This document shows positions 13,457 to 62,740 of a stretch of 64,000 nucleotides of DNA, in pieces. The position numbers and the translations under genes are program-made. Within the stretch, counting starts at the first letter, position 1, and the number at the start of each line of letters is the position of its first letter. Where the stretch lies: positions 62,001 through 126,000 of the IMG/VR virus record IMGVR_UViG_3300036781_000418. One strand, written 5' to 3'. The notes beneath the pieces were generated by a model that made no database searches, was not told where the DNA came from, and was given only the letters and a program-made list of their open reading frames with translations.

Positions 13457-13499
13457 GAGCTTGACCAAACCTGAGAAAATCACCTCACGAGTTCGCCCG

Positions 13500-13600
13500 T
13501 AGAGGCATTAGCTGACAGATAGTGCAGGTTCATGGTGCGGCGACACGAGAGGTCACCGGTGCGTCCCGAGACGGTGCGGTGTTGAACTCAACACCGCACC
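13500..13600 (-). repeat. Dispersed structured intergenic element, copy 1
   Basis: 13-bp hairpin (13573-13600), TCGTGTCGCCG, then the 34-nt core ATGAACCTGCACTATCTGTCAGCTAATGCCTCTA (13500-13533), which is shared with 39916-39949 and 61691-61724. Confidence 0.85.
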
Positions 13601-13610
13601 CACTTCAGTG

Positions 13611-13982
13611 TCACTCGGCCTCGTTCTTGATCCACTCGAGTGCAAGTTTCAGCTCCTCAATGAAGAGCTCTCCAGCCTCTTCAGCGTTGCTAAAAACCTT
13701 GCCATCCAGCTTGTTAAAGTTGCCGTCCATCTTGTACCAGCTGACCCGTGCACCCACTCGTGTGTCACGTGTCAAATCGTAACACAACGAAATAAACGGC
13801 AGTGGTTCATAAGAATCATTCGATATTACCTCGACAACACCTTGATTGTCCTTTAGCTCGTAGGTAATGGTCTTGTGCTTGAGCATCTTTGCGCAGAGTG
13901 CGGTCGCCTGCTTGGCCACCAACCCCGCGTGAAACTTGGCTTCTTCAAAGCCGTCAGATTCAAATAGTTGAGCTACGTTCAT
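13611..13982 (-). CDS. Putative internal head protein, CTS-like leader family (123 aa)
   Basis: MNVAQLFES leader. Clear paralog of 13979-14329 (LV.KQA.....KM.KH..I.YEL.D..G, WY..DG, EEAG.LF...LKLA). Confidence 0.7.
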   Translation of the reverse strand: MNVAQLFESDGFEEAKFHAGLVAKQATALCAKMLKHKTITYELKDNQGVVEVISNDSYEPLPFISLCYDLTRDTRVGARVSWYKMDGNFNKLDGKVFSNAEEAGELFIEELKLALEWIKNEAE

Positions 13983-39813: not shown

Positions 39814-39949
39814 CGGCGACACGAGGCGACGACGGCGTCGCTCGGTCGGTCTACATACTGTACCTTACACGTCGTCGACCTTAGGTGCACCGGTGACACC
39901 GGTCGTCGCCGTAACGTGAACCCGCACTATCTGTCAGCTAATGCCTCTA
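39814..39949 (+). repeat. Dispersed structured intergenic element, copy 2
   Basis: CGGCGACACGAGGCGAC (39814-39830), CGTCGCTCGGTCG, a variable middle, GTCGTCGCCG, then core GTGAACCCGCACTATCTGTCAGCTAATGCCTCTA (39916-39949). Confidence 0.85.
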
Positions 39950-39962
39950 AAACGAAATCGCG

Positions 39963-40163
39963 ATGAGAACCGTACAGCACATGTTTATGCCCACGCAGAC
40001 GATCAACGGGGTGATCAAGAAGGCCAACCTTCATGACGTCACCCCGTTGGAGTTGATTGAGCTCAACACCTCGTTCAACGAACTGAACGAGGGTCGCGTG
40101 CCGAGACCCGGTCAGGTCTTCACCGTGCCGATCCTAGACCGTCACTCGTCTACTGGACCGTAG
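39963..40163 (+). CDS. Small LysM-like protein (66 aa)
   Basis: TI..VIKK......L.ELN......PRPGQVFTVP pattern. This is the only plausible plus-strand gene in the region. Confidence 0.5.
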   Translation: MRTVQHMFMPTQTINGVIKKANLHDVTPLELIELNTSFNELNEGRVPRPGQVFTVPILDRHSSTGP

Positions 40164-51343: not shown

Positions 51344-51826
51344 ATGACAGCAGTTGTTCCTAAGAAAACCGTCAAACCCGCCAAACGAGAAAAGTCCACG
51401 TCGACTAAAGGTCACTACGTCAAGAACGCCGACCTGCTGCCTGCCTTCCATGAGGCCAAGGCGCTGAACAAGCTGACGCCGAAGCTAGCTGAGATGCTCA
51501 TGAAGATCGCGGAGCGCTACTCGTACCATCCATGGTTTGTTGGCTTCTCCTACCGCGAGGACATGGTCGCGTTCGCCATCGTCAACCTCTGCGCTAACTG
51601 GCATAAGTTCAACCCTGAGAAGTCAAGCAACCCCTTCTCCTACTACACGACGGCCTGCTACCGCAGCTTCCAGGCCTACCTTGGTGACGAGCGCAAGGAG
51701 CGCGACGGCCGTGACAAGCTGCTGATTGAAGCCGGGGCCAACCCATCGTTTAACTACCAGATGCGCGGTGGCAAAAGCTCGGACGACCATGCCTTTTCAG
51801 GCGGAGGAGGTGGAGACCATGAGTAA
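51344..51826 (+). CDS. gp55: Late-transcription sigma factor (160 aa)
   Basis: HYVKNADL, IAE.YS..P.F..FSYREDMV..A..N......FNPEKS.NPFSYYT.ACY..F.....ERK signature. Upstream of gp47/gp46 as in T4. Confidence 0.93.
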   Translation: MTAVVPKKTVKPAKREKSTSTKGHYVKNADLLPAFHEAKALNKLTPKLAEMLMKIAERYSYHPWFVGFSYREDMVAFAIVNLCANWHKFNPEKSSNPFSYYTTACYRSFQAYLGDERKERDGRDKLLIEAGANPSFNYQMRGGKSSDDHAFSGGGGGDHE

Positions 51827-52121
51827 CTATCCATTGCACGTTGAGTTCATGCCCAACGACCTACTGTTGTCTACCGAGGATGAAGTGCTGCAGCACTTCG
51901 TAGACGAGTTCCAGAAGCAAGATCCAAGTTTATCGCCAGCCCACATTCGTGGTTCAATGGTTGAGCAGCTTCGGTCAATCTTAGCTAACGGCAAGTACCA
52001 TCGTCAAGAACGTGTATTCATTACATGCTCTACAGCCCAGCTCCTACAAGACTGGAAGGACGTACCGTATGAATTTATCCTAGCCGCCTTCGAGCACTTG
52101 AAGTTTAAGCACAATGATTGA
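51819..52121 (+). CDS. Hypothetical protein (100 aa)
   Basis: Start MSNYPL at 51819 after a GGAG RBS, overlapping the gp55 end. Confidence 0.6.
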   Translation: MSNYPLHVEFMPNDLLLSTEDEVLQHFVDEFQKQDPSLSPAHIRGSMVEQLRSILANGKYHRQERVFITCSTAQLLQDWKDVPYEFILAAFEHLKFKHND

Positions 52122-52338
52122 ACTATCAACTCACGACATGCCTGAACGCTCGGACATGGCTGGCTGCTTCAGCAACTTGACACAGTCCAAAAAGGACCTG
52201 CTGAAGTCGGTGACCGCCAACTGGCACTACCGAGACGGCGTCTTACACGAAGACGGTTCCATGGGCACCGTAAAGATCAGTCACCTTCAGCTCCTTGACA
52301 CCTTAGCCTGGGTGCTGCTGAACGCCAAGCAGGGCTGA
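52114..52338 (+). CDS. Hypothetical protein (74 aa)
   Basis: Coupled to the upstream ORF on the operon strand. Confidence 0.55.
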   Translation: MIELSTHDMPERSDMAGCFSNLTQSKKDLLKSVTANWHYRDGVLHEDGSMGTVKISHLQLLDTLAWVLLNAKQG

Positions 52339-52412
52339 TCACGATACCAAGGTTCGTTGGCCGACCGCTTGCTTACAATGCAAGCATACCATCCGTAGCT
52401 GTCCTCAGTCTC

Positions 52413-53489
52413 ATGATGGTATCCAAATTTAACGACTTTGCCAACGCCCGAGTTCTCATGTTCACCGACATTCACGTCGGTGCTCGTGGCAACTCGGAGC
52501 AGCACCTCAATGACTGCATCCAGTACATCGAGTGGTTCATCGAGCTGGCCAAGCGCGAGCGTGCCACCCACATCGCCTTCCTCGGCGACTACTTCGAAAA
52601 CCGCAGCTCGATCAACGTCCAGTCCCTGAACGTTGGCACGCAGATCATGCGTCGCCTAAACTCGCTCGGCATCCCAATCATCTTCATGGTTGGAAACCAC
52701 GATCTGTACCACCGCAACACGCGTAAGGTCTTTTCAACGGACTCCTACAAGGACCTTGAGAACGTGCTGGTTGTCTCCGAACCGATGGAGCTGACGAAGG
52801 ACGTGTTAGTCGCCCCGTACCTCTTCAAGCAAGAGTACCTCGACATGGCCGACCAGATCAACTCCCACAAGTACGTCTTCGGTCACTTTGAGTTTCGTGG
52901 GTTCGTGGTGACCGGTGACACCAAGGTCCTCGAGCACGGCCCCGATGCAAGCGCCTTCACCGGTCCGAAGTTCATCTTCTCGGGCCACTTCCATAAGCGA
53001 CAGGTGGCCGGTAACGTCATCTACATCGGCAACACGTTCCCCACGAACTTTGGCGACGCTTGGGACACTGAACGCGGTGCTTCTCTGCTCGACATGTCAT
53101 CCGACGACGTCCTGTTCTTCGACTACCCCGACGCCCCACTGTTCTACAAACTTCGCATGACCGAGCTGTTGGCTAACCAGTCGCTCTCCTTCAAGGAGGG
53201 CGGTCGAGTTCGGTGTACCTTGGACCTTGATGTTGGCTACACTGACGTGCAGACGATCCGCGAGGAGATGATTGAGGCCTACAAGCTCCGTGAATTCCTC
53301 ATTGAAGAGGACTTCATCTCCAAGAAGGAGCTGATCGCCGAGGGCCTCGACGTTGACTCACTCGCCGTCGACCTATCCATGCTGCACAATACGATCGGCA
53401 CCCTGATCCGTGAAGGCGTGCAGCAGTCCCCAACGATCGACCCTGACCTGTTGATCAGCATCTTCGACGAACTTAAACTGGAAAAGTAA
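52413..53489 (+). CDS. gp47: Recombination nuclease subunit, Mre11/SbcD-like (358 aa)
   Basis: FTDIHVG, FLGDYFENR, VGNHD, FGHFE and FSGHFHK metallophosphoesterase motifs. Confidence 0.93.
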   Translation: MMVSKFNDFANARVLMFTDIHVGARGNSEQHLNDCIQYIEWFIELAKRERATHIAFLGDYFENRSSINVQSLNVGTQIMRRLNSLGIPIIFMVGNHDLYHRNTRKVFSTDSYKDLENVLVVSEPMELTKDVLVAPYLFKQEYLDMADQINSHKYVFGHFEFRGFVVTGDTKVLEHGPDASAFTGPKFIFSGHFHKRQVAGNVIYIGNTFPTNFGDAWDTERGASLLDMSSDDVLFFDYPDAPLFYKLRMTELLANQSLSFKEGGRVRCTLDLDVGYTDVQTIREEMIEAYKLREFLIEEDFISKKELIAEGLDVDSLAVDLSMLHNTIGTLIREGVQQSPTIDPDLLISIFDELKLEK

Positions 53490-53490
53490 C

Positions 53491-53808
53491 ATGGCCTTTT
53501 GGAAAACTGCCCCCGTCTCGGAAGAGCCTGAAATTACCCTGTACGACTGGAAGGTCTTCGAGCTTAACGACGGCTCGCGTCACTTCGTCGGCACCAACGG
53601 CGCGCGCGGCTCCGGCCGAGTCAGTTCGTCGATCCAAACATTTGACCCAACCACGATGAGTGGCGTGACGCGCTCTGGGCGCGTCTACAAGCTGGTTGGT
53701 GAAAGTGGGGATTCAATTAACGGTCTCTACACCTGGACAGGTTGGTGCCATGTTAACCGTGTCGATGACTGCATCGACGTATCAAACTTTATCGGAGAAA
53801 CTAAATGA
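53491..53808 (+). CDS. Hypothetical protein (105 aa)
   Basis: RHFVG....GRVSS.I..FD.....GVTRSGRVY.L.G pattern. Coupled within the operon. Confidence 0.7.
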   Translation: MAFWKTAPVSEEPEITLYDWKVFELNDGSRHFVGTNGARGSGRVSSSIQTFDPTTMSGVTRSGRVYKLVGESGDSINGLYTWTGWCHVNRVDDCIDVSNFIGETK

Positions 53809-54347
53809 CCTGTATCGTCGGACTTGAATACCACGGCAAGGTGCACATTGGTGGAGATCTACAAGGCACTGGCTGGAACAACAAGATCAAGCACGACCAG
53901 CCTAAGGTGTTCGTACGCAACGGCATCGCCTTCGGCTACACGACCTCCTACCGGTTCGGTCAGCTGCTTGAACATGTCCTGCCCGATCCAATCGTGCCGG
54001 CTAATCCAGATGAAATCTACCCATGGTTGATCAAGGTTCTGGTGCCGAGCATCAAGGACACGCTGAAGGACGCTGGCTATGAAGGTGGTGGCAACTGCCT
54101 AATCGGTGTAAAGAGCACCTTGTGGGAGCTGCAGAACGACTACTCAATCCTTCGTTCCGTGAACGGTTACGCGTCGGTTGGTTCTGGATATGAGTACGCC
54201 AACGGCGCGATGTACGCCATGTTGACCAAGCTGAAAGGACAGGCGTTGACGGACGAAGGCGCTCAAGACCTCGTTGAGCTGGCCATCGAGGCGGCCGGCA
54301 CGTTCTCACCGTCGGTGGGTGTTGACTCCGTGATCGTGACGGTGTGA
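53805..54347 (+). CDS. HslV/proteasome-beta-like Ntn hydrolase (180 aa)
   Basis: MTCIVG start (N-terminal Thr), GGD, K, FG..., ASVGSG..YA.GAM..., A.EAA..F...VG: Ntn-fold pattern. Confidence 0.78.
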   Translation: MTCIVGLEYHGKVHIGGDLQGTGWNNKIKHDQPKVFVRNGIAFGYTTSYRFGQLLEHVLPDPIVPANPDEIYPWLIKVLVPSIKDTLKDAGYEGGGNCLIGVKSTLWELQNDYSILRSVNGYASVGSGYEYANGAMYAMLTKLKGQALTDEGAQDLVELAIEAAGTFSPSVGVDSVIVTV

Positions 54348-56101
54348 TGACGACGAACCTTATTGGACTTAACACCATGAGGTTCCTGGAGCTTACCCTC
54401 CAGAACTTCATGAGCTTCGGTAACCGTCGTACGGTGTTTGACCTGTCAACTCCTGGAACCTACCTGATCAAGGGTGAGAACAAGGACGTGGGTGGCTCCA
54501 ACGGTTCAGGCAAGACGTCGGTGATCAACGGCATCTGCTACGCCCTGTTCAACCAACCATTTGACGACATCACGCTGAACCGCCTGATCAACACGACGAA
54601 CGCCTCGAAGAACACGTTGATGGAGGTCTCGCTGTCCTTCACCAAGGGCGTGGATGAGTACCTCATCACACGTACACGTGGCGCCGAGTTTATCACGACC
54701 ATCTTGAAGAACGGCGTTGACGTCACCCCTGGTAAGGGCGTCACGGAGTGTGACGCGTTGATCTCTGAGATCGTGGGTATGACACATGAGCTGTTCACCC
54801 GCACCGTCGTCTTCTCGGGCAACAACCAGGCTTTCCTCTCACTGCCAATTTCCCAACAGCGCTCGATCATTGAGGAGCTCTTCAACATCAAGATGCTCTC
54901 GGACCTGGCCATGAAGCTGCGTCCGCTGATCAAACAAACTGAGACCGACATCTCCGTTCAGCAGGCCGTCGTTCAACAGCAGCAGGTCGCCGTCGACCTG
55001 CACCGTAAACACCTCGTTGACGCGGCCACGCGGGTCAAGCGCTGGGACATGGACCGCAACTTGAGCATGTCCACGATCGAGAAGACGCTGGCCTCCCTTG
55101 AGGGCGTGGACTTTGAGTTTGAACGTGTGCTGCATGATGAAGTTAAGAACTACACGCAGAACCGAGTCCACGTTCAACAACAGGTCAACGACGCCACCCG
55201 CATCAAGCGCGAGCTGACGAAGAAGGTCGAGAATCTGTTGGGTGAAGAGCGTCACCTGCTCGACGCCAAGTGCCCGTACTGCAAGCAGAAGTACCACGAC
55301 ACGTCCGCGAAGCTGGCCGAGATCAACGCTGAGCTGGACAAGCTGAACGACTCATTGGTGACCGTCGAGGACATGGAGCTTCGGGCAACCGAGGACTTGA
55401 AGAAGGTCGACGAGCTGTTGGCCGACCGCCGCAGTCGCATCAAGCACCCCGACTTCGACAAGCTGCTCAAGGCCAAGTCCGACGCGGCCCTACTGCAGGA
55501 GAAGCTGGATGACCTGAAGATCCAGACCAACCCACACCACGAGGCCTTCGATAAGCTAAACAGTGAAGGCGAGCCGATCATCGAAACGTCCAAGGTCGAC
55601 GTGTTGAAGAAGCGGCTGGAACATCAGCAGCTCCTACTTAAGCTGCTCGTCAACAAGGACTCGTTCGTCCGTCATCGAATCTTGAACAAGTCGCTGCCGA
55701 TTCTCAATGAACGGATGAACTACTACACCAAGCTGTTGGGTCTCCCACACGCCGTAAAGTTCCAGGCTGACATGTCCTGCACGGTGACTGAGTTCGGGCG
55801 TGAGCTTGACTTTGGTAACCTGTCGACCGGAGAGAAGAAGCGGGTGAACACGGCCATGAACTTCGCGTTCTCCGAGGTCCGGGCCCTGCTCCATGCCCGA
55901 GTCAACCTCATGCTGATCGACGAGATCGACGGTGGACTTGATCCTGAAGGGCTGGAGGCGGTCGTCAAGCAGGTGAAGTTGAAGTCTAGGGCCGATCACA
56001 TGACGATCTTCATGATCTCCCACCACCCATTGATCGACGGTCGACTAGATCGAACGATTTTGATCCGTAAGGAGCAGGGGTTCTCCTCGTTGGTAGAGTG
56101 A
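54344..56101 (+). CDS. gp46: Recombination ATPase, Rad50/SbcC-like (585 aa)
   Basis: NFMSFGN, Walker A GGSNGSGKT, coiled coil with a CPYC zinc hook, signature LSTGEKKR and Walker B LIDEIDGGLD. Confidence 0.95.
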   Translation: MMTTNLIGLNTMRFLELTLQNFMSFGNRRTVFDLSTPGTYLIKGENKDVGGSNGSGKTSVINGICYALFNQPFDDITLNRLINTTNASKNTLMEVSLSFTKGVDEYLITRTRGAEFITTILKNGVDVTPGKGVTECDALISEIVGMTHELFTRTVVFSGNNQAFLSLPISQQRSIIEELFNIKMLSDLAMKLRPLIKQTETDISVQQAVVQQQQVAVDLHRKHLVDAATRVKRWDMDRNLSMSTIEKTLASLEGVDFEFERVLHDEVKNYTQNRVHVQQQVNDATRIKRELTKKVENLLGEERHLLDAKCPYCKQKYHDTSAKLAEINAELDKLNDSLVTVEDMELRATEDLKKVDELLADRRSRIKHPDFDKLLKAKSDAALLQEKLDDLKIQTNPHHEAFDKLNSEGEPIIETSKVDVLKKRLEHQQLLLKLLVNKDSFVRHRILNKSLPILNERMNYYTKLLGLPHAVKFQADMSCTVTEFGRELDFGNLSTGEKKRVNTAMNFAFSEVRALLHARVNLMLIDEIDGGLDPEGLEAVVKQVKLKSRADHMTIFMISHHPLIDGRLDRTILIRKEQGFSSLVE

Positions 56102-56132: not shown

Positions 56133-56792
56133 ATGAAGCTCAACATCTTCGAGGCGCCGCCCTCCATCACCCGTAAGGTTCACCCGGACGCCATCAAGGG
56201 ACCCGCATGGATGAACAACATGGGGCTAACTGACCTCGCCGATCGATGGAAAAGCCGTACCAAGGAGGTGGACGGCGACGTGTTGATGGTCAATAACCAG
56301 CTGAAGAACCTTAAGGGCGGCCCGACGATCATCCATGGGACGTACAACGCCTCTAAGAACAAGTTGACGACGTTTGAAGGGTCCCCCACCTACGTGTCAA
56401 AGGACTTCATCGTCTACGGCAACCGGCTAACTGACTTTCTTGGACTGCACATTGAAGTCGGTGGTGACGTGGACCTTAGCAACAACCTGTTCAGGTCCCT
56501 GAAGGACATCCACAAGCACATCCTACACACCAAGACGCTGTCCATTGAGGACAACCCAATCGAGTCGCACGTGCTTGGGATCTTCAAGATCAAGGGCCTG
56601 GAAGCCCTCGAGTTCTTTCCGCAGAACGACGTAAACCCCAAAGGCATAACGGCTGACTACACAGAAACGGACAACAAGGTAGCCAAGATCGTCAACGACT
56701 GCTTCAAGGCTCACGGTGCGACGAACGTCGGCCTGTTGGAGTGCCAGGAACAGTTGATCGACGCCGGCTTCCATGAATACGCCCAGCTGTAA
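56133..56792 (+). CDS. Leucine-rich-repeat-like protein with CTS-like leader (219 aa)
   Basis: NQLKNLKGGP, NKLTTFEGSP, NRLTDF and NLFRSL repeats. MKLNIFEA start. C-terminus CQEQLIDAGFHEYAQL. Confidence 0.82.
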   Translation: MKLNIFEAPPSITRKVHPDAIKGPAWMNNMGLTDLADRWKSRTKEVDGDVLMVNNQLKNLKGGPTIIHGTYNASKNKLTTFEGSPTYVSKDFIVYGNRLTDFLGLHIEVGGDVDLSNNLFRSLKDIHKHILHTKTLSIEDNPIESHVLGIFKIKGLEALEFFPQNDVNPKGITADYTETDNKVAKIVNDCFKAHGATNVGLLECQEQLIDAGFHEYAQL

Positions 56793-56819
56793 ATACAACC
56801 TGAACCTACCAGGACCAAC

Positions 56820-57293
56820 ATGAAAACCTTGCTCGAACTTCTCTCCATGCTTCATGAGGCCGACGACGATACCACTGAGGATCAAGCGAAGACCGCCAAG
56901 GACCTCTGGGACGCCGGGTCACCTGAGGCCTACGTTTCGAAGATCCAATATGGCATCAAGAAGAACGACAACGGCACCTACCAGGTGACAACCGAGAACA
57001 ACGACCGCCGTCAGGTGATCAGCCAGTCGGTCTCGGCTTCCTACGTCTCGTCGAACTACGTCAAGATGTCCAAGGACGCGACCCCAGACGTCGAAGGCTA
57101 CGTGCTCTACCGTTCGGTCGGCCAGCAGGAAGCCATCCAGTACAAGGGTGATACAGCTCGAATCGACGTGGACGGTAAGACCGTCACCATGAACGCGGGC
57201 GACTACCTCATTAAGACGACGGACGACAACGGTAAGACCTTCTTCTCAGTTGAAACTGAGGACGCCTTCGAATCGGATTGGGAACAGAAGTGA
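56820..57293 (+). CDS. Hypothetical, possibly internal head protein (157 aa)
   Basis: MKTLLELLSMLHEA leader. TAAATA at 56790-56795 overlaps the upstream stop. Confidence 0.72.
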   Translation: MKTLLELLSMLHEADDDTTEDQAKTAKDLWDAGSPEAYVSKIQYGIKKNDNGTYQVTTENNDRRQVISQSVSASYVSSNYVKMSKDATPDVEGYVLYRSVGQQEAIQYKGDTARIDVDGKTVTMNAGDYLIKTTDDNGKTFFSVETEDAFESDWEQK

Positions 57294-58108
57294 AGATTCA
57301 TCAGCTGCATGAGATTTCGTCGGCCGACGAGTACCGCCAGACCACCGCGTATGGTGAGCCCGTGTTCATCATCGAACACTCCTCGACAGGGGACTTTAGC
57401 CCATTCAACAAGTTGATCGCGGTGGCGGCAAAGAAGGCTATGACGGGCGGCCACATGATGTTGAAGGTTGAGGTTAGGAACGCGCTTAAAAGCACCAAGG
57501 GCCTGTCGAAAGCCGACATCGGCGAGATCGACGTATCGAGAAACGACTTGATCTCAATGGAAGGTCTTGAGTGGTTTGACAGCTTCTTGAACATCTCCTC
57601 CAACAACTTGACGGAGCTACGCTGTGCGAAGACCATGCACGCGCTTGAGGTGGACAACAACGACCTGCACACCCTTACAGGTGGTCCAAAGCACTTGAGC
57701 GGACACTACTCAGCTTCTCACAACAAGCTGACTGACTTTTCCGGAGCACCGGTCGAGGTCTCGCAATCGCTGCACCTGTCGCACAACCAGATCTCGTCGT
57801 GGAGCGGCGTGAGCGGTATGCATATTCAGGACGACCTTGACCTAACCGGTAACAAGCTGAGCTCCATGCGCGGTGTTGATAAGGTCCTCAGCGGCTGTGA
57901 GGACCTTATCCTTACCGACAACCCACCGCCAAAGCACGTGTTGAACCTGTTCAACGTCGACGAGATCCGTCAGGGGGTTACCTTTGACGACGCCAAGCTG
58001 TCTAAGATCATCAACAAGCACCTGCACACCGGTGGTAAAGAAGGCATGCTCGACTGCCAAGAAGAGTTGATCGACGCTGGGTACTCACAGGAAGTCGCCT
58101 CCCTATGA
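57290..58108 (+). CDS. Leucine-rich-repeat-like protein with CTS-like leader (272 aa)
   Basis: GTG start (MKIHQLHEI) overlapping the upstream TGA. Several xxNxLxxLxGxP repeats. C-terminus CQEELIDAGYSQEVASL. Confidence 0.82.
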   Translation: MKIHQLHEISSADEYRQTTAYGEPVFIIEHSSTGDFSPFNKLIAVAAKKAMTGGHMMLKVEVRNALKSTKGLSKADIGEIDVSRNDLISMEGLEWFDSFLNISSNNLTELRCAKTMHALEVDNNDLHTLTGGPKHLSGHYSASHNKLTDFSGAPVEVSQSLHLSHNQISSWSGVSGMHIQDDLDLTGNKLSSMRGVDKVLSGCEDLILTDNPPPKHVLNLFNVDEIRQGVTFDDAKLSKIINKHLHTGGKEGMLDCQEELIDAGYSQEVASL

Positions 58109-58911
58109 AGCTACTTCAGGCGCTGTGTGAAGATACTCGAAAGATGAAGATGAAGGATGGGTCGTCCTACCGCATCGTTGAAAGCCCAAACACGCGTACC
58201 ATCTACATCGAAGAAACCGAGACAGGTGACCTAACGCCGTTCCATGGTCAATGGGAGCATATGCGCGAGGGCTTTGAGCACATGATTAAAATCAGTATTA
58301 CCTACGGTAGAATTGGCGGCTTCAACAGCTTCCACGGACTGCCAGCCGAGATCTGTGAGCACGCTGAGTTTAAGTTGGCGGGCAATGACTACATGGACAA
58401 GCTTCAAGGCTGGCCTAGTGGTGGTGAACCATACAGCTTCACGATTGAAAACGCCGCCCTCTCTACCTTTGAAGGTTTTCCAGACAAGTTTGGACACGAT
58501 CTTTCAGTTGAAAACGTTCCCATTAAGTCGTTCAAGGGCTTCCCATCTAACGTTGGCTATTCCTGCAACCTACATGATCTTGACGTAGTTGACTTCACCG
58601 GTGCTACTGGATCTACTGGGCGCAACGTTGACCTTCGCCGTTGTCATGAACTAAAGTCGTTCCGTGGCATTGACAAGCTGTTCAGCGGTGGTTTGGCAAG
58701 CACCTTGTCGATTGATAAGGTGCGTTCAATGAAGCATATCCTGCACGTCATGAACGTTCCAAATCTCCGATTTGTCAGCTTCTCTGACAACACACCCTTG
58801 TCACTACTCATCAACGAACACCTCGATGCCGGTCACGGCAAGGCGGGCGTTGTTCACCTTCAAAACGCCCTGCTCGATGCGGGGTATGACGAAGAGTTCG
58901 CTAGCCTTTAA
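58105..58911 (+). CDS. Leucine-rich-repeat-like protein with CTS-like leader (268 aa)
   Basis: FNSFHGLP, LSTFEGFP, IKSFKGFP and LKSFRGI repeats. C-terminus LQNALLDAGYDEEFASL. Confidence 0.8.
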   Translation: MKLLQALCEDTRKMKMKDGSSYRIVESPNTRTIYIEETETGDLTPFHGQWEHMREGFEHMIKISITYGRIGGFNSFHGLPAEICEHAEFKLAGNDYMDKLQGWPSGGEPYSFTIENAALSTFEGFPDKFGHDLSVENVPIKSFKGFPSNVGYSCNLHDLDVVDFTGATGSTGRNVDLRRCHELKSFRGIDKLFSGGLASTLSIDKVRSMKHILHVMNVPNLRFVSFSDNTPLSLLINEHLDAGHGKAGVVHLQNALLDAGYDEEFASL

Positions 58912-58920
58912 GGAGCCACC

Positions 58921-59091
58921 ATGCTGTTTACCGCTATTTGCCTCTTCATGCTTGGCCTGTTGTGGGGTGGTGCCAGGTGGCTAACTAACTGCGAGCATGA
59001 GTTTGAGCTGGTCATCCATGAGGAGGACGAGCTAGGTTACGCCTACACCGTCAAACGCTGTAAAGTCTGCGGCGAAGAGCGCGATACCTAA
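58921..59091 (+). CDS. Small membrane-anchored protein with a C-H/CxxC Zn-finger-like motif (56 aa)
   Basis: Below the ORF-track cutoff. AGGAG RBS. Translation MLFTAICLFMLGLLWGGARWLTNCEHEF...KRCKVCGEERDT. Confidence 0.6.
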   Translation: MLFTAICLFMLGLLWGGARWLTNCEHEFELVIHEEDELGYAYTVKRCKVCGEERDT

Positions 59092-59147
59092 GTCAGCCGC
59101 CGACCCTAAATAGGTCAGATCGTTCTGATCTGACTCATTCCATATAC

Positions 59148-59717
59148 ATGACTGAAAAACTAGAGAAGCCCAAGCGCAAGATGCGCCCTGGAGGGGGTAA
59201 GGCGAAGGGTAACGGCTTTGAAGGCCAGGTAGCCAAGAAGCTTTCAGCCGCCCTACCCATCAACTTCATCCGCTCACCTGGGTCAGGAGCCCGTGTCGGT
59301 GGCAAGAACTTCGACAAGCTCGGCGCGCTGTTCGGGGCCGAGGCCATGAAGCTCTTCAGCGCGGACGTGGTTCCAATCAACGAGAAGGAGGCGGGCTGCA
59401 CGTTCCGCTTCTCGGTGGAGTGCAAGTCGTACGCGACGTCTGACAACTTCGTTGCGCTAGCCAGTGGAACGGCCAACATCTTCGCATGGTTCCAAGAGTC
59501 CGTGGTTGACGCGGCGAAGACTGACCGCCATCCAATGTTGATCGCCCACTGGAACCGCTCTCCCAACTACGTCTTCGTTCGTCCTTGGCATATGCCACAG
59601 GCCGTCAAGCCAGTTCTCACGTTGATTCACCGCAACGAAGAAGGCTTTGGTGAAACCCTTGACGTCTACATTCTTGAAGACCTGTTGAAGCACCCTGAAC
59701 TTTGGATTGCCAAATGA
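59148..59717 (+). CDS. Holliday junction resolvase, Hjc-type PD-(D/E)XK (189 aa)
   Basis: K.KGNGFE..VAK.LS, R.PGSGA, ADV and FSVECK motifs. TAAATA at 59107-59112 followed by an 8-bp hairpin. Confidence 0.85.
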   Translation: MTEKLEKPKRKMRPGGGKAKGNGFEGQVAKKLSAALPINFIRSPGSGARVGGKNFDKLGALFGAEAMKLFSADVVPINEKEAGCTFRFSVECKSYATSDNFVALASGTANIFAWFQESVVDAAKTDRHPMLIAHWNRSPNYVFVRPWHMPQAVKPVLTLIHRNEEGFGETLDVYILEDLLKHPELWIAK

Positions 59718-60295
59718 TTACCAACCCTCGCTGGACCATCCGCGCGGACGCCGTTCGCCCAGACGGCAACTACTCTGACTTGCTGTCACAAGTCCGTCGT
59801 CACTACGACATGTACTGCTCCGCTGAGCAGTTCCTTGGCCCCTACAACGCCAAGGCCCGTGGCAAGACCATCTACGTGCCGCCATCGCGTGACATGATGC
59901 GTGAGCTGATTAAGCAATGTGGTGTCAACGACGTCACGTACTACGCCTTCCTGTCCTCGCTCGTTCGCTTCTGTGAGACGACCAAGGGCAACATGGCCCT
60001 GCCGTTGGCCCATCCGTCGACCGTGCACTCAATTCAGCTGCCTGAAGGCACGTTCGAACTGCGTCAGCAGGAGCACTCAAAGCCGGTGCTGCAGCTTGGC
60101 GTAGGTGATCCAGTCGAGCTGCGCGGTGACGTGAAGGGCAAGGTCGGCTTCGCAATCTTGCGTCCACGCATGACCCAACGAGGCATGACCTCGGCGACGC
60201 AGTGGGAGGCCCTCCTGTTCGAACACCGTCATGGTTACCTACCTATCTGGACCGACTCAGGTGTCAATCCTCGGTGGGCTGGCTCCCTGACCTAA
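59714..60295 (+). CDS. Hypothetical protein resembling the TnpB N-terminal REC/WED half, with no RuvC (193 aa)
   Basis: ATGA-coupled to the resolvase. Colinear, by-eye resemblance to IS605 TnpB N-terminal motifs (see findings). Unverified. Confidence 0.5.
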   Translation: MITNPRWTIRADAVRPDGNYSDLLSQVRRHYDMYCSAEQFLGPYNAKARGKTIYVPPSRDMMRELIKQCGVNDVTYYAFLSSLVRFCETTKGNMALPLAHPSTVHSIQLPEGTFELRQQEHSKPVLQLGVGDPVELRGDVKGKVGFAILRPRMTQRGMTSATQWEALLFEHRHGYLPIWTDSGVNPRWAGSLT

Positions 60296-60303
60296 ACGGC
60301 TGG

Positions 60304-60331
60304 TTGTATGGTGCCGAGTAGCTTCTATAAT
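60304..60331 (+). promoter_or_regulatory. Sigma70-type promoter for the PolA-like ORF
   Basis: TTGTAT (60304-60309), 16-nt spacer, TATAAT (60326-60331). The ATG at 60341 would be nearly leaderless. Confidence 0.6.
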
Positions 60332-60340
60332 GGTCACTAC

Positions 60341-61585
60341 ATGTCACCATACAAGCTTCACCATCACCACGTTCCAGTGGACCACGTCCTCCACTGGTCG
60401 TTCTTCTGGCCTGACAAGCAGCGCATCCACAAGTCAAAGGTGCAGGTTCGACAGGACCTTGTGCTGTGGTTGGCCGCGGCCTGGGTTGGCTCAAGGTCGG
60501 GCCCACCGGCCCCAAACGGTTTTCGAGGTATCAAGGTTCGACTAACCTCGCTCCGAGAGCTGGTGCGTGACTTCCAGCCAGCCGTTGAGTTCTTCTTCAC
60601 CATCACCCAGCTAGGGTTCAACCTTGAGGACAACTTTGAGGTGAGCACCCTCGTACCGAAGACCCTGTCACCTGAGGCCACTCGTGTCATTGAGGCTGAA
60701 GTCCAGCTGATGAGCTACGTTCCGGCTGAACCGCCGACCGACGCGAACGTCTCGACGGTCTATATCCAATCCAACCTTGATGTTGAGGACCTGGTGCAGC
60801 GCACGTCCAGTGCCGGACGTGGTGAGCTTGTTCCACAGCTCCGTTGGTTGATTGCCCATGGACCTAGGCATGAGTTTCACTTCATGCCGTCTGGGCGTCT
60901 CCAACTGCGAGATACCAGCGTCTACCCCGTCATGGCGATTGAAACCTGGCCAGGTTGGTTGCGCGAGGAGTTGTTTGGGGCGGGCATTGACTTGGACGCA
61001 GCCTACATCCAGTTCCTGATGCACTGGCTCAAGGAGTCGTTCAATCGTTCCGAAGCGAAGCTCAAGCTGTACTTCCCAAGCCTCATGCGGCTGATGTACG
61101 ACAAGGAAGTTTACCGTCGAGAGCTCTGCGAAGAGGGCCTGAAGTTGGAGTACAACGACACGAACAAGTTGATGATCAAGCGGCTGATCATGTGCCTCGC
61201 CAACGGTTCACGCATTTCAGGAAAGATCCTTGTTCGTCGTACTGAATTTTCAGCCGCCACGGCCGTGCTGTTGGCGGCACTTCCTGACGCGACGGACGCC
61301 CAGCTCATTGAGGTTGGCGAGGTGCTTCGTCGAATCAACGACGAGTTTAACTCGGCGCGGCGGTACGTCTACATGGAGCTGAACGCCAAGCACCCTACGC
61401 GTAAGGCGATCAAGGAGGTCTTCATCGAGTACTTCATGTGGGAACGTGAAGCTCGATACGCCCTTTGGGAGGCGATCGACCGCCATGGCATCATGGTTCA
61501 CGACGGCATCGACGGTGTTCCAGCCGAGTACCGAGCTCGACTCGGCGAACTGATGGAGCAGCTTGACCTTCGCTTCTCAGTATAG
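60341..61585 (+). CDS. Minimal family-A polymerase-fold protein with no exonuclease domains (~414 aa)
   Basis: SGRLQ...LREELF..IDLDAA (pre-motif and motif A Asp), IKRL..CLANG (motif B-like) and IMVHDG (motif C). Start placed at 60341, after the TATAAT box. Confidence 0.7.
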   Translation: MSPYKLHHHHVPVDHVLHWSFFWPDKQRIHKSKVQVRQDLVLWLAAAWVGSRSGPPAPNGFRGIKVRLTSLRELVRDFQPAVEFFFTITQLGFNLEDNFEVSTLVPKTLSPEATRVIEAEVQLMSYVPAEPPTDANVSTVYIQSNLDVEDLVQRTSSAGRGELVPQLRWLIAHGPRHEFHFMPSGRLQLRDTSVYPVMAIETWPGWLREELFGAGIDLDAAYIQFLMHWLKESFNRSEAKLKLYFPSLMRLMYDKEVYRRELCEEGLKLEYNDTNKLMIKRLIMCLANGSRISGKILVRRTEFSAATAVLLAALPDATDAQLIEVGEVLRRINDEFNSARRYVYMELNAKHPTRKAIKEVFIEYFMWEREARYALWEAIDRHGIMVHDGIDGVPAEYRARLGELMEQLDLRFSV

Positions 61586-61588
61586 ACA

Positions 61589-61724
61589 CGGCGACACGAA
61601 GCGACGCCGTCGTCGCTCGGTCGTTGAAGGTGATGAGCCAAACAGACGAGGGACCCTAGGGTCCCTCGGTTCATTTCGTGTCGCCGCTACATGAACCCGC
61701 ACTATCTGCCAGCTAATGCCTCTA
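61589..61724 (+). repeat. Dispersed structured intergenic element, copy 3
   Basis: CGGCGACACGA (61589) pairs with TCGTGTCGCCG (61676-61686). Perfect 22-nt palindrome at 61647-61668. Core ATGAACCCGCACTATCTGCCAGCTAATGCCTCTA at 61691-61724. Confidence 0.88.
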
Positions 61725-61739
61725 CGAGCGAGCGCTGTG

Positions 61740-61976
61740 TTAGTACACGGGGTGCGACGACTTGGCCGCGGCTTCAAGGCGCTTGTTGATGAACTCCACC
61801 ATCATGTCCCGTTCAAGGGCGGAGCGATCCATCACTGACTCGTAGGACCAGGAGCCTCGGGAATAGTACGAGATTTCGATGGACGCCTTGATGAGCGTCT
61901 TCACCTCAAGCTGCATTCGATCAATCGACTGTCGGATCTTGGCGTGATCGCCGCTCAAGATCAGGCGGTGAAAAAA
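61740..61976 (-). CDS. gp51-like / chaperone-T segment, either a -1 frameshift extension of the gp26-like gene or a separate 58-aa ORF from 61916
   Basis: Open -1 frame begins across the T TTT TTC site. I.Y..RG..SYE.VMD.S..ER..M.EFI helical pattern. Confidence 0.65.
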   Translation of the reverse strand, partial: FFHRLILSGDHAKIRQSIDRMQLEVKTLIKASIEISYYSRGSWSYESVMDRSALERDMMVEFINKRLEAAAKSSHPVY

Positions 61977-62740
61977 CTCACTGGGTTCAGTGGGAGCTCC
62001 ACCTTCATGTCCTGGCCACAGTCCTTGCACTTGATAGTCACCACTTGATCAGGACCCCAGTCGTTCAGGTTCTCGGCCGCCTTCGTGATGGACTCGATCT
62101 GTGGCGACGTCAGCGTCTTGATCCACTCTTCAATGTGTTCACGCTCCGTGGTGGTGTCTACTGACTCGATCATGCAGAGTAGGTTGTGGACCGACAGCTT
62201 CTTCACGTCGTCGATCGTCATCTCCTTCGACATACCAGTCATCTGGAACATCTCAATGACGTCACGGAAGCGGAGTGGGCGGGTCACCACGACTTCACCG
62301 GAGCTAAGGGTAACCTGACGAACCGTCTCAATCAAGGTCGGGTCCAACTGCTTCATGGCGAGCAGCATGTTGTCAAGGTTGACGATGTAGGAGTGGTCCT
62401 TGGCCTCGGCACAGGTGTGCTTCACCTCGATACCGAACTCATTACCGTACGTTACCAACCGTAGGAAGAACAGCAGGGCGTCGATGTCGCGACCGAAGAG
62501 CTCCAGTGGCTTCTTGATGCTCGGTGCGCACTCGGCGACGATGTCCTCGATGGCGCGACCATTGAACAGCAAGTCCTGGTTCTTCAGGCTAATTTCGTTC
62601 AAGGCCGACAGCGGCTTGATTTGAATTTCACCGGTTGAGTAGCTGGCCTCCAACTCACCGTTGTGGTACAGGGCACCACGTGACGGCAGCTGGAAGACGC
62701 GGCCTGGGAGACGGTGCTTGAGGAGTGGATTGGTTGACAT
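61961..62740 (-). CDS. gp26: Baseplate hub/tail assembly chaperone, gp26-like (259 aa)
   Basis: LPSRG..Y, I.IKPL.A..EI.L.N.D.L.NG.AI, D.DALL..LR..TYG, HTC and C..CG....VEL....FF signature. TAAATA at 62784-62789 (minus). Confidence 0.85.
   Translation of the reverse strand: MSTNPLLKHRLPGRVFQLPSRGALYHNGELEASYSTGEIQIKPLSALNEISLKNQDLLFNGRAIEDIVAECAPSIKKPLELFGRDIDALLFFLRLVTYGNEFGIEVKHTCAEAKDHSYIVNLDNMLLAMKQLDPTLIETVRQVTLSSGEVVVTRPLRFRDVIEMFQMTGMSKEMTIDDVKKLSVHNLLCMIESVDTTTEREHIEEWIKTLTSPQIESITKAAENLNDWGPDQVVTIKCKDCGQDMKVELPLNPVSFFTA

What the first reader, a model, noticed from the sequence alone, without database searches (positions are those of the whole stretch)
59714..61724. Candidate new system: TnpB-like REC/WED-only protein + minimal PolA-fold polymerase + structured repeat RNA
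Seen: a 193-aa ORF and a ~414-aa ORF are followed within 4 nt by repeat copy 3. The first ORF tracks IS605 TnpB N-terminal motifs in order: WTIRADA, LSQVRRHYD, KARGKTI, YAFLSSLVRF...GNMALP, HSIQLP, VLQLGVG.PVELR, KGKVGFAIL, QWEALL. It stops before any RuvC residues. The second retains family-A polymerase catalytic residues but lacks exonuclease domains. Established: TnpB REC/WED binds an omega-RNA scaffold and target DNA, and nuclease-dead derivatives have been domesticated (TldR). Inference: a domesticated RNA-binding module working with a polymerase on the dispersed element, for example in guided or templated synthesis or origin priming. The adjacent Hjc resolvase could supply cleavage. This is speculative.
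Basis: inference. Interest (0 to 1): 0.82.

Follow-up and report, generated by a model that had tools for sequence, protein, structure and literature searches.

The report
Two orphan phage genes, folds identified
Two unannotated genes of a 343-kb T4-like soil phage are predicted to fold like the DNA/RNA-gripping half of TnpB/Cas12f, without its nuclease, and like a stripped-down family-A polymerase, but nothing shows that they work together or with the neighbouring repeat.

Summary
ORF193 (59714-60295) and ORF414 (60341-61585) are real, conserved genes, and a repeat copy starts 3 nt after the ORF414 stop.

- ORF193: the AlphaFold2 model (pLDDT 89.5) gives Cas12f/Cas12k N-terminal lobes as its top 22 PDB matches (best E 1.7e-3, TM 0.56). 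Its topology matches the published TnpB WED+REC description. It has no RuvC or zinc-ribbon domain and no sequence-level link to TnpB.
- ORF414: the model is very confident (pLDDT 94.3) but has no PDB match. A family-A polymerase fold rests on ESM-Atlas structure neighbours of a proxy cluster, on weak BFVD hits, and on three invariant motifs collinear with T7 DNA polymerase in a non-significant alignment.

The three-part "system" is not supported.
- Across about 60 related phage contigs, ORF193 sits directly after a resolvase-type nuclease (median gap 7 nt).
- ORF414 lies 6-2580 nt further on and is usually coupled to a small basic protein that this window lacks.
- 11 of 53 loci lack ORF193.
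- The repeat is a genome-wide element of this phage alone: 11 copies spaced about 31 kb apart.

Best reading: these are lineage-specific genes of the T4-type recombination block, gp47/gp46-resolvase. Functions are inferred, not shown.

The parts
59148..59717 (+). Resolvase-type PD-(D/E)XK nuclease, 189 aa. Its stop overlaps the ORF193 start (ATGA).
   Evidence: Pfam PDDEXK_15 E 4.6e-20. PHROG 244, annotated 'RusA-like Holliday junction resolvase', E 5.7e-14. In relatives this position holds either this nuclease or an Endonuclease_7 protein.
59714..60295 (+). ORF193: basic 193-aa protein with a predicted WED-like beta-barrel split by a four-helix REC-like insertion. No nuclease domain.
   Evidence: AF2 pLDDT 89.5, pTM 0.84. 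Foldseek against PDB: top 22 hits are all Cas12f/Cas12k, best E 1.7e-3, prob 1.00, TM 0.56. Topology matches the TnpB description in PMC10097598. Family median pI 9.5. No Pfam, PHROG, NCBIfam or PADLOC hit.
60341..61585 (+). ORF414: compact protein resembling a family-A polymerase domain, with no exonuclease domain. Invariant D217 (GIDxDxAYxQF), K280...N288-G289-S290, and H387-D388-G-x-D-G.
   Evidence: AF2 pLDDT 94.3. Invariant columns are also kept in distant relatives, two of which have Tyr-Gly at the N288 position. ESM-Atlas structure neighbours of the 413-aa proxy cluster: 9 of 10 rows are DNA_pol_A, TM 0.49-0.60. BFVD best hit E 2e-9 to an uncharacterised phage protein; hits named as polymerases are weak. 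Motifs are collinear with T7 DNA polymerase in a non-significant hhalign alignment. No PDB fold hit and no Pfam hit.
61589..61739 (+). Dispersed repeat, copy 3. Inverted arms at 61589-61599 and 61676-61686 enclose a variable interior with a bidirectional terminator-like hairpin (61647-61668). A 48-nt near-identical core follows at 61692-61739.
39814..39965 (+). Dispersed repeat, copy 2. It lies between two minus-strand genes, antisense to both.
13485..13640 (-). Dispersed repeat, copy 1. Its core ends 72 nt upstream of the 2918-aa minus-strand ORF, and its 5' part overlaps the end of gene 13611-13982.
51344..56101 (+). Upstream context: gp55-like late sigma factor (51344-51826), gp47/SbcD-like (52413-53489), an HslV-like peptidase (53805-54347) and gp46/SbcC-like (54344-56101).
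   Evidence: PHROG and Pfam hits. The same gene order is seen in relatives.
61961..62740 (-). Downstream context: T4-type baseplate hub gene, convergent with ORF414. The conserved 96-aa gene at 61740-62030 (-) follows it.
   Evidence: Pfam T4_baseplate E 2e-11 and PHROG 150. Conserved in relatives.

Best explanation
ORF193 and ORF414 are two separate lineage-specific genes of a clade of T4-like, mostly jumbo, environmental phages. They sit in the conserved recombination/repair block gp55-gp47-gp46-...-resolvase-ORF193-...-ORF414, next to the baseplate hub gene.

ORF193 is a basic nucleic-acid-binding protein. Its predicted fold is the WED beta-barrel plus REC helical insertion of TnpB/Cas12f, without any RuvC or zinc-ribbon part. 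It is co-translated with the phage's junction-resolving nuclease. It most likely helps that nuclease bind or choose branched or heteroduplex DNA (inferred).

ORF414 is a compact polymerase-domain-only protein of the family-A (Pol I / T7) superfamily with its predicted catalytic carboxylates intact. It most likely carries out DNA synthesis during recombination or repair (inferred). An invariant Tyr/Phe sits where family-A enzymes have their steric-gate Glu; this correspondence comes from the non-significant alignment.

The repeat next to ORF414 is not part of the pair. It is one of 11 evenly spaced intergenic cassettes of this one genome, made of inverted arms, terminator-like hairpins and a 48-nt core. 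Here it fills a convergent intergenic gap, where its hairpin can act as a bidirectional terminator.

Shown: that the genes are real, the synteny, the predicted folds, the motif conservation, and the repeat's distribution. Inferred: every biochemical activity.
For: - Both families are conserved but narrow: only 49 clusters at 50% identity match the ORF414 profile among 1.84 billion proteins.
- Synteny with gp55/gp47/gp46, the nuclease and the baseplate hub holds in about 60 contigs, down to 33-35% identity.
- The nuclease-to-ORF193 gap has a median of 7 nt in 75 of 78 loci, across two unrelated nuclease folds: PDDEXK_15 in 58 loci and EndoVII in 17.
- ORF193 fold. Family median pI 9.5.
- ORF414 fold and motifs.
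- Repeat: 11 copies in the 342,591-bp contig, with gaps of 18-44 kb and CV 0.27 (P about 2.5e-5 against random placement). A terminator-like hairpin is predicted on both strands.
Against: - The ORF193-Cas12f match is borderline in E-value (1.7e-3; none at or below 1e-3) and about 10% identical. Solved TnpB structures are not among the 50 hits listed. There is no sequence-level link. An independently elaborated OB fold cannot be excluded.
- The confident ORF414 model has no PDB Foldseek hit at all (best E 1.2).
- The DNA_pol_A structural neighbours belong to a proxy Atlas cluster, not to my own model.
- hhalign against T7 polymerases is not significant: probability 0.06-4.5%.
- ESM features of a distant relative point equally to the RNA_pol and DNA_pol_A families, so DNA versus RNA synthesis is open.
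- Tight gene spacing shows co-expression, not physical partnership.
- No expression data exist: only a DNA soil-metagenome run holds the locus.
Confidence: 0.45

Rival explanations
1. ORF193, ORF414 and the structured repeat form one RNA-guided or RNA-templated synthesis or priming system, with the resolvase supplying cleavage.
For: - The two fold assignments are broadly right.
- In this window the genes lie 45 nt apart and the repeat starts 3 nt after ORF414.
- In L113 the two genes are 56 nt apart with no nuclease upstream.
- The repeat's even spacing would suit origins or priming sites.
- A TnpB-PrimPol association is described in Deinococcus (PMC10691335).
Against: - The gap between the genes is usually 0.2-2.6 kb of unrelated genes.
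- ORF193 is absent from 11 of 53 loci.
- Each gene is coupled to a different neighbour.
- The repeat occurs only in this genome and one contig of the same sample.
- Relatives lack room for the repeat after ORF414.
- The repeat shows no covariation, no Rfam family and mixed orientation.
- No RNA data exist.
Confidence: 0.06
2. A split targeting-lobe-plus-nuclease enzyme. ORF193 is a TnpB/Cas12f-derived WED/REC lobe that works in trans with the adjacent stand-alone nuclease (PD-(D/E)XK or EndoVII in place of RuvC). It directs cutting to specific DNA, possibly the evenly spaced repeat with its cruciform-prone inverted arms, to start recombination-dependent replication. ORF414 would be a bystander or would extend the ends.
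For: - ORF193 follows a nuclease at a median of 7 nt in 75 of 78 loci, although the nuclease fold has been swapped.
- In TnpB the WED and REC domains read the TAM, and the REC domain, with RuvC, lines the channel that holds the guide-target heteroduplex (PMC10097598).
- The repeat has 11-nt inverted arms and palindromic hairpins and is evenly spaced.
Against: - Adjacency may only reflect an operon.
- The repeat is not conserved in relatives, while the gene pair is.
- 11 loci keep the nuclease without ORF193.
- No guide RNA candidate was found.
- Homology of the fold to TnpB is not proven.
Confidence: 0.12
3. The resemblances are superficial. ORF193 is a generic OB-fold DNA-binding or structural protein unrelated to TnpB. 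ORF414 is not an active polymerase: it could be a degenerate scaffold or another nucleotidyltransferase.
For: - No sequence-profile link to any known family for either protein.
- No Foldseek hit for ORF193 reaches E <= 0.001.
- No PDB hit for ORF414.
- The genes lie next to baseplate genes.
Against: - All 22 top hits for ORF193 are one protein family from several species, with probability mostly >= 0.8 (two lower), and they span the full length.
- The seven-strand barrel with a four-helix insertion after beta1 matches exactly.
- ORF414 keeps the invariant Asp, Lys and His-Asp in the order and spacing of polymerase motifs A, B and C. Distant relatives restore the canonical Tyr-Gly.
- 9 of 10 Atlas structural neighbour rows are DNA_pol_A.
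Confidence: 0.2
4. ORF414 is a minimal T7-like single-subunit RNA polymerase or primase, and the 48-nt repeat core is its promoter or origin.
For: - The best, though non-significant, hhalign alignment is to T7 RNA polymerase motif B (KRSVMTLAYGSK against KRLIMCLANGSR).
- ESM features of relative P0223 include RNA_pol clusters.
- The core contains CACTAT.
Against: - Real T7-group promoters share only about 12 of 23 positions with the core.
- Only about half of the cores face a downstream same-strand gene.
- Motif A is in register with T7 DNA polymerase, not with T7 RNA polymerase.
- Atlas structural neighbours are DNA_pol_A.
- Tyr/Phe at the steric-gate position argues for dNTP use (inference).
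- The phage carries a gp55-type late sigma factor.
Confidence: 0.07

Closest known systems
TnpB (IS200/IS605 OrfB) and miniature Cas12f/Cas12k: N-terminal WED+REC lobe
   Same: - A predicted seven-stranded beta-barrel with a four-helix insertion between beta1 and beta2.
- The same size: about 190 aa, against residues 1-176 of ISDra2 TnpB.
- A basic protein.
- The top 22 structural matches are Cas12f/Cas12k.
   Different: - No RuvC domain, no zinc-ribbon (TNB) domain and no Pfam OrfB signatures.
- Not in a transposon and no TnpA nearby.
- No identified omega-RNA or CRISPR array.
- It is a vertically inherited gene of a T4-like phage clade, encoded right after a resolvase-type nuclease.
Exapted, nuclease-dead TnpB/Cas12f derivatives: TldR, and sigma-factor-associated dCas12f (PMC10691335; bioRxiv 10.1101/2025.06.10.658865)
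   Same: - A TnpB/Cas12f-type scaffold kept for binding rather than cutting.
- dCas12f structures (9n9c, 9n9m) are among the Foldseek hits.
   Different: - Those proteins keep the whole, inactivated RuvC lobe and a guide RNA.
- ORF193 has lost the entire C-terminal half, and no guide is evident.
PrimPol-TnpB operons of Deinococcus (PMC10691335)
   Same: A TnpB-type protein encoded near a DNA polymerase-type enzyme.
   Different: - There the TnpB is full-length and active, and the polymerase is an AEP-family PrimPol.
- Here the WED/REC protein is truncated and the polymerase is family-A-like.
- The linkage here is loose.
Family-A DNA polymerases (Pol I Klenow, T7 gp5) and T7-like RNA polymerases
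   Same: - Motifs collinear with T7 DNA polymerase motifs A, B and C: GID, K followed 8 residues later by (N/Y)G, and VHD(G/E).
- An all-helical segment between motifs A and C, and a beta-hairpin at motif C.
- ESM-Atlas structure neighbours are DNA_pol_A.
   Different: - Only about 414 aa, with no 3'-5' or 5'-3' exonuclease domain.
- No Pfam DNA_pol_A or RNA_pol match.
- An invariant Asn replaces the motif-B Tyr, and Tyr/Phe replaces the motif-A steric-gate Glu.
- No PDB Foldseek hit.
T4 recombination/repair genes (gp46/gp47, gp49 EndoVII)
   Same: The same gene neighbourhood, with gp55, gp47, gp46 and an EndoVII or equivalent resolvase.
   Different: No T4 protein appears among the listed PDB fold hits of either model, and no annotated phage record holds either protein.

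Membership tests
TnpB / Cas12 (IS200/IS605 OrfB superfamily) | WED domain: a seven-stranded OB-like beta-barrel, with a helical REC domain inserted between beta1 and beta2 | tested here: met
   The AF2 secondary structure is beta 9-14, four helices (21-49, 59-65, 73-90, 101-104), six strands (107-169) and one helix (180-183). Foldseek: the top 22 PDB hits are Cas12f/Cas12k, TM 0.39-0.57, probability up to 1.00, best E 1.7e-3. The published TnpB description matches. This is a prediction, and the E-value is borderline.
TnpB / Cas12 (IS200/IS605 OrfB superfamily) | RuvC (RNase H-fold) nuclease domain with a D-E-D triad | tested here: not met
   The protein ends at residue 193, straight after the barrel. 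There is no further domain in any of the 61 family members, which are 188-202 aa long.
TnpB / Cas12 (IS200/IS605 OrfB superfamily) | TNB / zinc-ribbon domain and Pfam signatures PF12323, PF01385 and PF07282 | tested here: not met
   No Pfam hit at E <= 1 and no NCBIfam hit. hhalign of A3 against E. coli InsQ gives probability 0.07%. True TnpBs carry all three Pfam domains.
TnpB / Cas12 (IS200/IS605 OrfB superfamily) | An associated guide RNA (omega-RNA or crRNA) encoded at or after the 3' end of the gene | tested here: inconclusive
   ORF414 starts 45 nt after ORF193. There is no Rfam match in the window. The nearby repeat is dispersed genome-wide and shows no covariation. No RNA-seq data exist.
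TnpB / Cas12 (IS200/IS605 OrfB superfamily) | Residence in a mobile IS element, with TnpA and transposon ends | tested here: not met
   The position in the phage gene order is fixed across about 60 contigs, and no transposase lies nearby.
TldR / dCas12f-type nuclease-dead derivatives | A full-length TnpB/Cas12f scaffold with an inactivated RuvC, plus a guide RNA | tested here: not met
   The RuvC lobe is absent altogether.
Family-A DNA polymerase (Pfam DNA_pol_A, PF00476) | A sequence-profile match to DNA_pol_A | tested here: not met
   No Pfam hit for ORF414, for any of the 67 family members at E <= 10, or for 10 distant relatives. A PDB profile search found nothing. hhalign against a T7 gp5 profile gives probability 0.06-0.2%.
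Family-A DNA polymerase (Pfam DNA_pol_A, PF00476) | The right-hand palm/fingers/thumb fold of Pol I type | tested here: inconclusive
   For: the Atlas structure neighbours of the 413-aa proxy cluster (feature score 0.92) are DNA_pol_A in 9 of 10 rows, TM 0.49-0.60 over 270-312 residues. BFVD lists a '3'-5' exonuclease domain' protein and a DNA polymerase at E 0.08-0.23. Against: Foldseek of my own model against PDB gave no relevant hit.
Family-A DNA polymerase (Pfam DNA_pol_A, PF00476) | Catalytic motifs: A (Asp at a strand end), B (Lys with Tyr-Gly 8 residues on, in the O-helix) and C (His-Asp-Glu hairpin) | tested here: inconclusive
   D217, K280, G289 and H387-D388 are invariant. Position 288 is an invariant Asn in the family but Tyr in distant relatives P0223 and P0225. 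All three motifs align collinearly with T7 gp5 (GIDASGLELR, AKTFIYGFLYG, VHDE), but the alignment is not significant.
Family-A DNA polymerase (Pfam DNA_pol_A, PF00476) | An attached 3'-5' and/or 5'-3' exonuclease domain (typical but not universal) | tested here: not met
   At 414 aa, the whole length aligns to the polymerase domain of the Atlas neighbours. No exonuclease Pfam hit.
T7-like single-subunit RNA polymerase (PF00940) | A profile match, an N-terminal promoter-binding domain and a specificity loop | tested here: not met
   No Pfam hit. hhalign probability is 1-4.5%. No beta-hairpin is predicted in the fingers region, residues 219-383. The repeat core matches only about 12 of 23 positions of T7-group promoters.
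Anti-phage defence systems (PADLOC) | A match to any known defence protein model | tested here: not met
   No hit for the nuclease, ORF193, ORF414 or two distant relatives.

The most novel reading that the evidence does not exclude
ORF193 is a free-standing TnpB/Cas12f-derived targeting lobe (WED+REC) that has shed its RuvC half. It now works in trans with an interchangeable stand-alone nuclease (PD-(D/E)XK or EndoVII), and perhaps with the neighbouring minimal family-A polymerase. Together they would cut or prime at defined sites of a jumbo phage genome, such as the cassettes spaced about 31 kb apart, to start recombination-dependent replication. That would be a modular descendant of an RNA-guided nuclease serving as a core replication factor of a virus.
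Probability: 0.08. Interest if true: 0.9.

Novelty: new variant of a known kind. Interest (0 to 1): 0.58.

Why it matters
A stand-alone WED/REC lobe has, to my knowledge and in the papers I read, not been described. Known TnpB/Cas12 exaptations keep the whole scaffold. If ORF193 is truly derived from TnpB/Cas12f, the targeting half of these enzymes can be domesticated alone. It could then be paired with unrelated nucleases, and this has happened in the conserved core of a large clade of T4-like jumbo phages.

ORF414 would define a new, very small branch of the family-A polymerase superfamily, about 410 aa with no exonuclease. Two canonical active-site residues are replaced: Asn for the motif-B Tyr, and Tyr for the steric-gate Glu. 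That makes it interesting for polymerase evolution and possibly as a compact enzyme.

Both proteins give function leads for two families that are "hypothetical" in every database searched. The evenly spaced repeat is a separate, testable clue to how a 343-kb phage genome is organised.

Tried and rejected
- Pfam, PHROGs, NCBIfam and PADLOC scans gave nothing for ORF193 or ORF414.
- tblastn against 50,697 annotated phage genomes gave nothing for either protein, and megablast of the locus gave nothing.
- HMMER profiles against PDB sequences gave only chance hits.
- Foldseek of the ORF414 model against PDB gave no meaningful hit.
- The ESM Atlas search for ORF193 was uninformative because its stored model is poor (pTM 0.19).
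- hhalign of A3 against E. coli InsQ gave no signal.
- My last large homology search, on InsQ, was meant to build a TnpB profile. It returned only 93-100% identical E. coli copies and was useless for that purpose.
- hhalign of A4 against T7 RNA polymerase and T7 DNA polymerase profiles was not significant. Those profiles were built from 12 non-redundant IMG/VR relatives each.
- The distant relatives P0223 and P0225 lie on 3-4 kb contigs, so they give no context.
- I first thought the repeat core looked like a T3/T7-type promoter, from memory. Real T7-group promoters share only about 12 of 23 positions, so I dropped the idea.
- A sigma-70 promoter scan of 59000-62200 found none.
- tRNA and Rfam scans of the window found nothing.
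- A search for RNA-seq runs found only one DNA soil-metagenome run, so I did not use read laying.
- The jumbo-phage comparative genomics paper mentions neither family.
- I could not determine whether the phage also has a family-B (gp43) replicative polymerase, because only fragments of the contig can be fetched.

Full report
CONTEXT

The window is part of IMG/VR contig IMGVR_UViG_3300036781_000418 (342,591 bp). Window coordinate x corresponds to about contig x+62,000. Only one public run holds the locus, a DNA soil metagenome.

The neighbourhood is T4-like:
- a gp55-type late sigma factor (51344-51826);
- gp47/SbcD (52413-53489);
- an HslV-like peptidase (53805-54347);
- gp46/SbcC (54344-56101);
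- three paralogous genes (56133-58911);
- a PD-(D/E)XK resolvase-type nuclease (59148-59717);
- ORF193, then ORF414;
- on the other strand, a 96-aa gene and a T4-type baseplate hub gene.

OBSERVATION

The coordinates are right.
- ORF193 is 59714-60295. Its ATG overlaps the nuclease's TGA (ATGA).
- ORF414 is 60341-61585. The family alignment supports the 60341 start.
- The ORF414 stop is 61583-61585 and the repeat begins at 61589.

Both are genuine genes. ORF193 has 61 relatives at 37-66% identity with 94-100% of the query covered. ORF414 has 173 relatives with E <= 0.001. Almost all sit on large viral contigs and none has a functional name.

Neither protein matches Pfam, PHROGs, NCBIfam or PADLOC. 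Neither matches any of 50,697 annotated phage genomes or any PDB sequence.

ORF193

The AlphaFold2 model built on the 61-sequence alignment is confident (pLDDT 89.5, pTM 0.84). Its element order is:
- one strand (9-14);
- four helices (21-49, 59-65, 73-90, 101-104);
- six strands (107-169);
- a short helix (180-183).

Foldseek against the PDB returns Cas12f or Cas12k chains as its first 22 hits. They come from several species and include dCas12f. The best E-value is 1.7e-3, probability reaches 1.00, and TM is 0.56 by query. TM is 0.54 by target for chains in which only the N-terminal lobe, about 200 residues, is ordered.

The cryo-EM paper on ISDra2 TnpB describes exactly this topology. [quoted passage not shown] The REC domain (13-116) consists of four helices inserted between beta1 and beta2 (PMC10097598). 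Cas12f WED domains share the same seven-stranded core. The family is basic, with a median pI of 9.5.

The caveats are these:
- No hit reaches E <= 0.001.
- Identity is about 10%.
- Solved TnpB structures are not among the 50 hits listed.
- No sequence method links the family to TnpB.
- My attempt to build a TnpB profile failed because the search returned only near-identical E. coli InsQ copies.

The protein has no RuvC or zinc-ribbon part, so it is not a TnpB. It is at most a derivative of one half.

ORF414

The model is very confident (pLDDT 94.3), yet Foldseek finds nothing relevant in the PDB.

In BFVD the best match is an uncharacterised 509-aa protein of an uncultured phage (E 2e-9). Four unnamed 700-915-aa proteins follow with probability 1.0. 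Hits named as a 3'-5' exonuclease-domain protein, a DNA polymerase or an RNA polymerase appear only at E 0.08-2.2.

The ESM Atlas gives as first hit a 413-aa viral cluster (score 0.92, 186 of 256 features shared). The structure neighbours of that cluster's model are DNA_pol_A clusters in 9 of 10 rows, with TM 0.49-0.60 over 270-312 residues. All ten best named feature hits share the DNA_pol_A family or clan. That support is indirect, because it rests on a proxy model.

The family has invariant D217 (consensus GIDIDSAYTQF), K280, N288-G289-S290 and H387-D388-G389 (MVHDGIDG). These are retained in the most distant relatives found among 1.84 billion representatives; only 49 clusters match in all. 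Two of those relatives, of 669 and 752 aa, read Tyr-Gly where ORF414 has Asn-Gly.

A permissive hhalign run puts all three motifs in register with T7 DNA polymerase:
- GIDASGLELR with GIDLDAAYIQ;
- AKTFIYGFLYG with IKRLIMCLANG;
- VHDE with VHDG.

The alignment is not significant, with probability 0.06%. The T7 RNA polymerase alignment scores slightly better (probability 4.5%) but puts motif A out of register. ESM features of relative P0223 point equally to the RNA_pol and DNA_pol_A families.

I conclude that a family-A-superfamily polymerase domain without exonuclease is the best reading. It is not proven, and the choice of nucleotide is open. The invariant Tyr222, five residues after D217, sits where T7 gp5 has a Glu (its steric gate, from established knowledge). 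I take this as a hint for dNTP use (inference).

ARE THE TWO GENES A PAIR?

I fetched 53 loci with an ORF414 relative and 44 with an ORF193 relative from IMG/VR, plus three from other assemblies. I then mapped the neighbours with HMMs.

The order is conserved down to 33-35% identity: gp55, gp47, gp46, ..., nuclease, ORF193, ..., ORF414, ..., 96-aa gene (-), hub (-). Both families occur only in this context. Their co-occurrence therefore reflects lineage synteny and not a mobile module.

Within the block the tight couplings are different ones:
- ORF193 directly follows a resolvase-type nuclease in 75 of 78 loci, with a median gap of 7 nt. The nuclease is PDDEXK_15 in 58 loci and Endonuclease_7 in 17, which are two unrelated folds.
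- The ORF193-to-ORF414 gap has a median of 515 nt (range 6-2580) and holds variable genes, including homing endonucleases.
- In 46 of 56 loci a conserved basic protein of 65-87 aa lies upstream of ORF414, most often with an ATGA overlap. It is absent from this window.
- 11 of 53 loci keep the nuclease and ORF414 but have no ORF193 in 6 kb on either side. In L014 and L020 there is no room for it.
- None of those contigs appeared in the ORF193 scan, although that scan also missed some true members.

The close adjacency seen in this window is thus the exception.

THE REPEAT

The window has three copies: about 13485-13640 (-), about 39814-39965 (+) and 61589-61739 (+). An exact search for the 21-nt core motif finds 11 copies in the phage's own contig. 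It finds one in a 34-kb contig of the same sample and none elsewhere in IMG/VR.

The anatomy, is:
- 11-nt inverted arms (CGGCGACACGA and TCGTGTCGCCG) around a variable interior of about 75 nt that contains GC-rich hairpins;
- in copy 3, a hairpin at 61647-61668 that scores as a terminator on both strands;
- a core of about 48 nt that is nearly identical in all copies.

Three copies have the core without the arms. RNAalifold supports only the closing stem and finds no compensatory change. Rfam and tRNA scans are empty.

Orientation relative to flanking genes is mixed. About half of the cores face a same-strand gene, while others are antisense or lie in convergent gaps. Relatives have only about 30-175 nt between ORF414 and the next gene, so the element is not conserved at this position. 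A remembered resemblance to T3/T7 promoters did not survive comparison with real promoters. The repeat is therefore not a specific partner of the two ORFs.

One unexpected property stands out. The 11 copies lie at 9.0, 50.5, 75.5, 101.9, 123.7, 158.8, 202.6, 234.6, 278.2, 306.0 and 323.7 kb. The gaps are 18-44 kb with CV 0.27, and only 2.5e-5 of random placements are as even. What needs such spacing is unknown. Candidates are transcription-unit boundaries, origins, and recombination or organisation sites.

INTERPRETATION

The best-supported reading (confidence 0.45) has three parts.
- ORF193 is a WED/REC-like nucleic-acid-binding protein co-expressed with the junction resolvase. It probably assists that nuclease on branched or heteroduplex DNA.
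- ORF414 is a minimal family-A-type polymerase serving recombination or repair synthesis.
- The repeat is an unrelated genome-wide cassette, which here supplies a bidirectional terminator between convergent genes.

All functional statements are inferences, because no expression or biochemical data exist.

COMPARISON WITH WHAT IS KNOWN

Known TnpB/Cas12 exaptations keep the full scaffold and a guide RNA. They include TldR, sigma-associated dCas12f, Cas12k and Cas12m. The PrimPol-TnpB operons involve a full-length, active TnpB (PMC10691335). I found no description of a stand-alone WED/REC lobe in these papers or in the jumbo-phage comparative genomics paper.

ORF193 fails the membership tests for TnpB (no RuvC, no TNB, no Pfam signatures, no transposon context) but meets the fold test for the N-lobe. 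ORF414 fails the sequence membership test for DNA_pol_A and passes fold and motif tests only inconclusively.

I therefore rate the finding as a new variant of known kinds, of moderate-to-good interest. It is less than the new "system" proposed, but it is more than ordinary hypothetical genes.

Noticed in passing
window about 13485-13640 (-), 39814-39965 (+), 61589-61739 (+); loci L057-L068: The dispersed repeat has 11 copies in the 342,591-bp contig, spaced 18-44 kb apart (mean 31 kb, CV 0.27). Only 2.5e-5 of random placements are as even. The strand pattern is ---++--++-+. The element occurs only in this phage and in one contig of the same sample.
   Followed up: partly
window 21887-21904 (-): A solitary copy of the repeat's 5' arm plus first hairpin (CGGCGACACGAGGCGACA...), without the conserved core. 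It may be a decayed or half copy.
   Followed up: no
L002:7798-8004, L011:5786-5995 and 44 other loci: A conserved basic protein of 65-87 aa (MNAKxAKRLR...) lies upstream of ORF414 in 46 of 56 related loci, most often with an ATGA stop/start overlap. It has no family annotation and is absent from this 64-kb window.
   Followed up: partly
window 59148-59717 compared with L001:6467-6865 and L002:6507-6935: The gene in front of ORF193 is a PDDEXK_15 nuclease in 58 loci and an Endonuclease_7 (T4 gp49-type) protein in 17. This is a non-orthologous swap of resolvase-type nucleases at one position.
   Followed up: partly
window 56133-58911 (+): Three consecutive genes (219, 276 and 268 aa) share a C-terminal motif (...CQE[EQ]LIDAG[FY]...[AS]L) and a DNA repeat (56730-56767 and 58043-58080). 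This is a small paralogous family between gp46 and the nuclease, with no PHROG hit for the first member.
   Followed up: no
window 4671-13427 (-): A single 2918-aa ORF, presumably a giant fibre or structural protein, with repeat copy 1 ending 72 nt upstream of its start codon.
   Followed up: no
window 53805-54347 (+): A protein annotated as HslV-family peptidase (PHROG 1040, E 6.6e-20) sits between the gp47-like and gp46-like genes. A 179-aa gene occupies the same position in L001.
   Followed up: no
window 20625-21470: Three copies of a 60-nt direct repeat, spaced 365-421 nt apart (68-92% identical). They are probably tandem paralogous small genes.
   Followed up: no
L012:3186-3929, L048:4603-5112, L002:3459-4166: Homing-endonuclease-like genes are inserted at different points of the conserved block in relatives. 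Two look GIY-YIG-like by their N-terminal sequence, and one has a NUMOD3 domain. They account for part of the variable spacing between ORF193 and ORF414.
   Followed up: no
ORF193 residues C87, H100, H105 (window about 59972-60028): An invariant Cys and two invariant His, plus a nearly invariant H30, cluster at the REC/WED junction. They could form a metal site, reminiscent of the zinc finger inserted in Cas12f N-lobes. This was not tested structurally.
   Followed up: no
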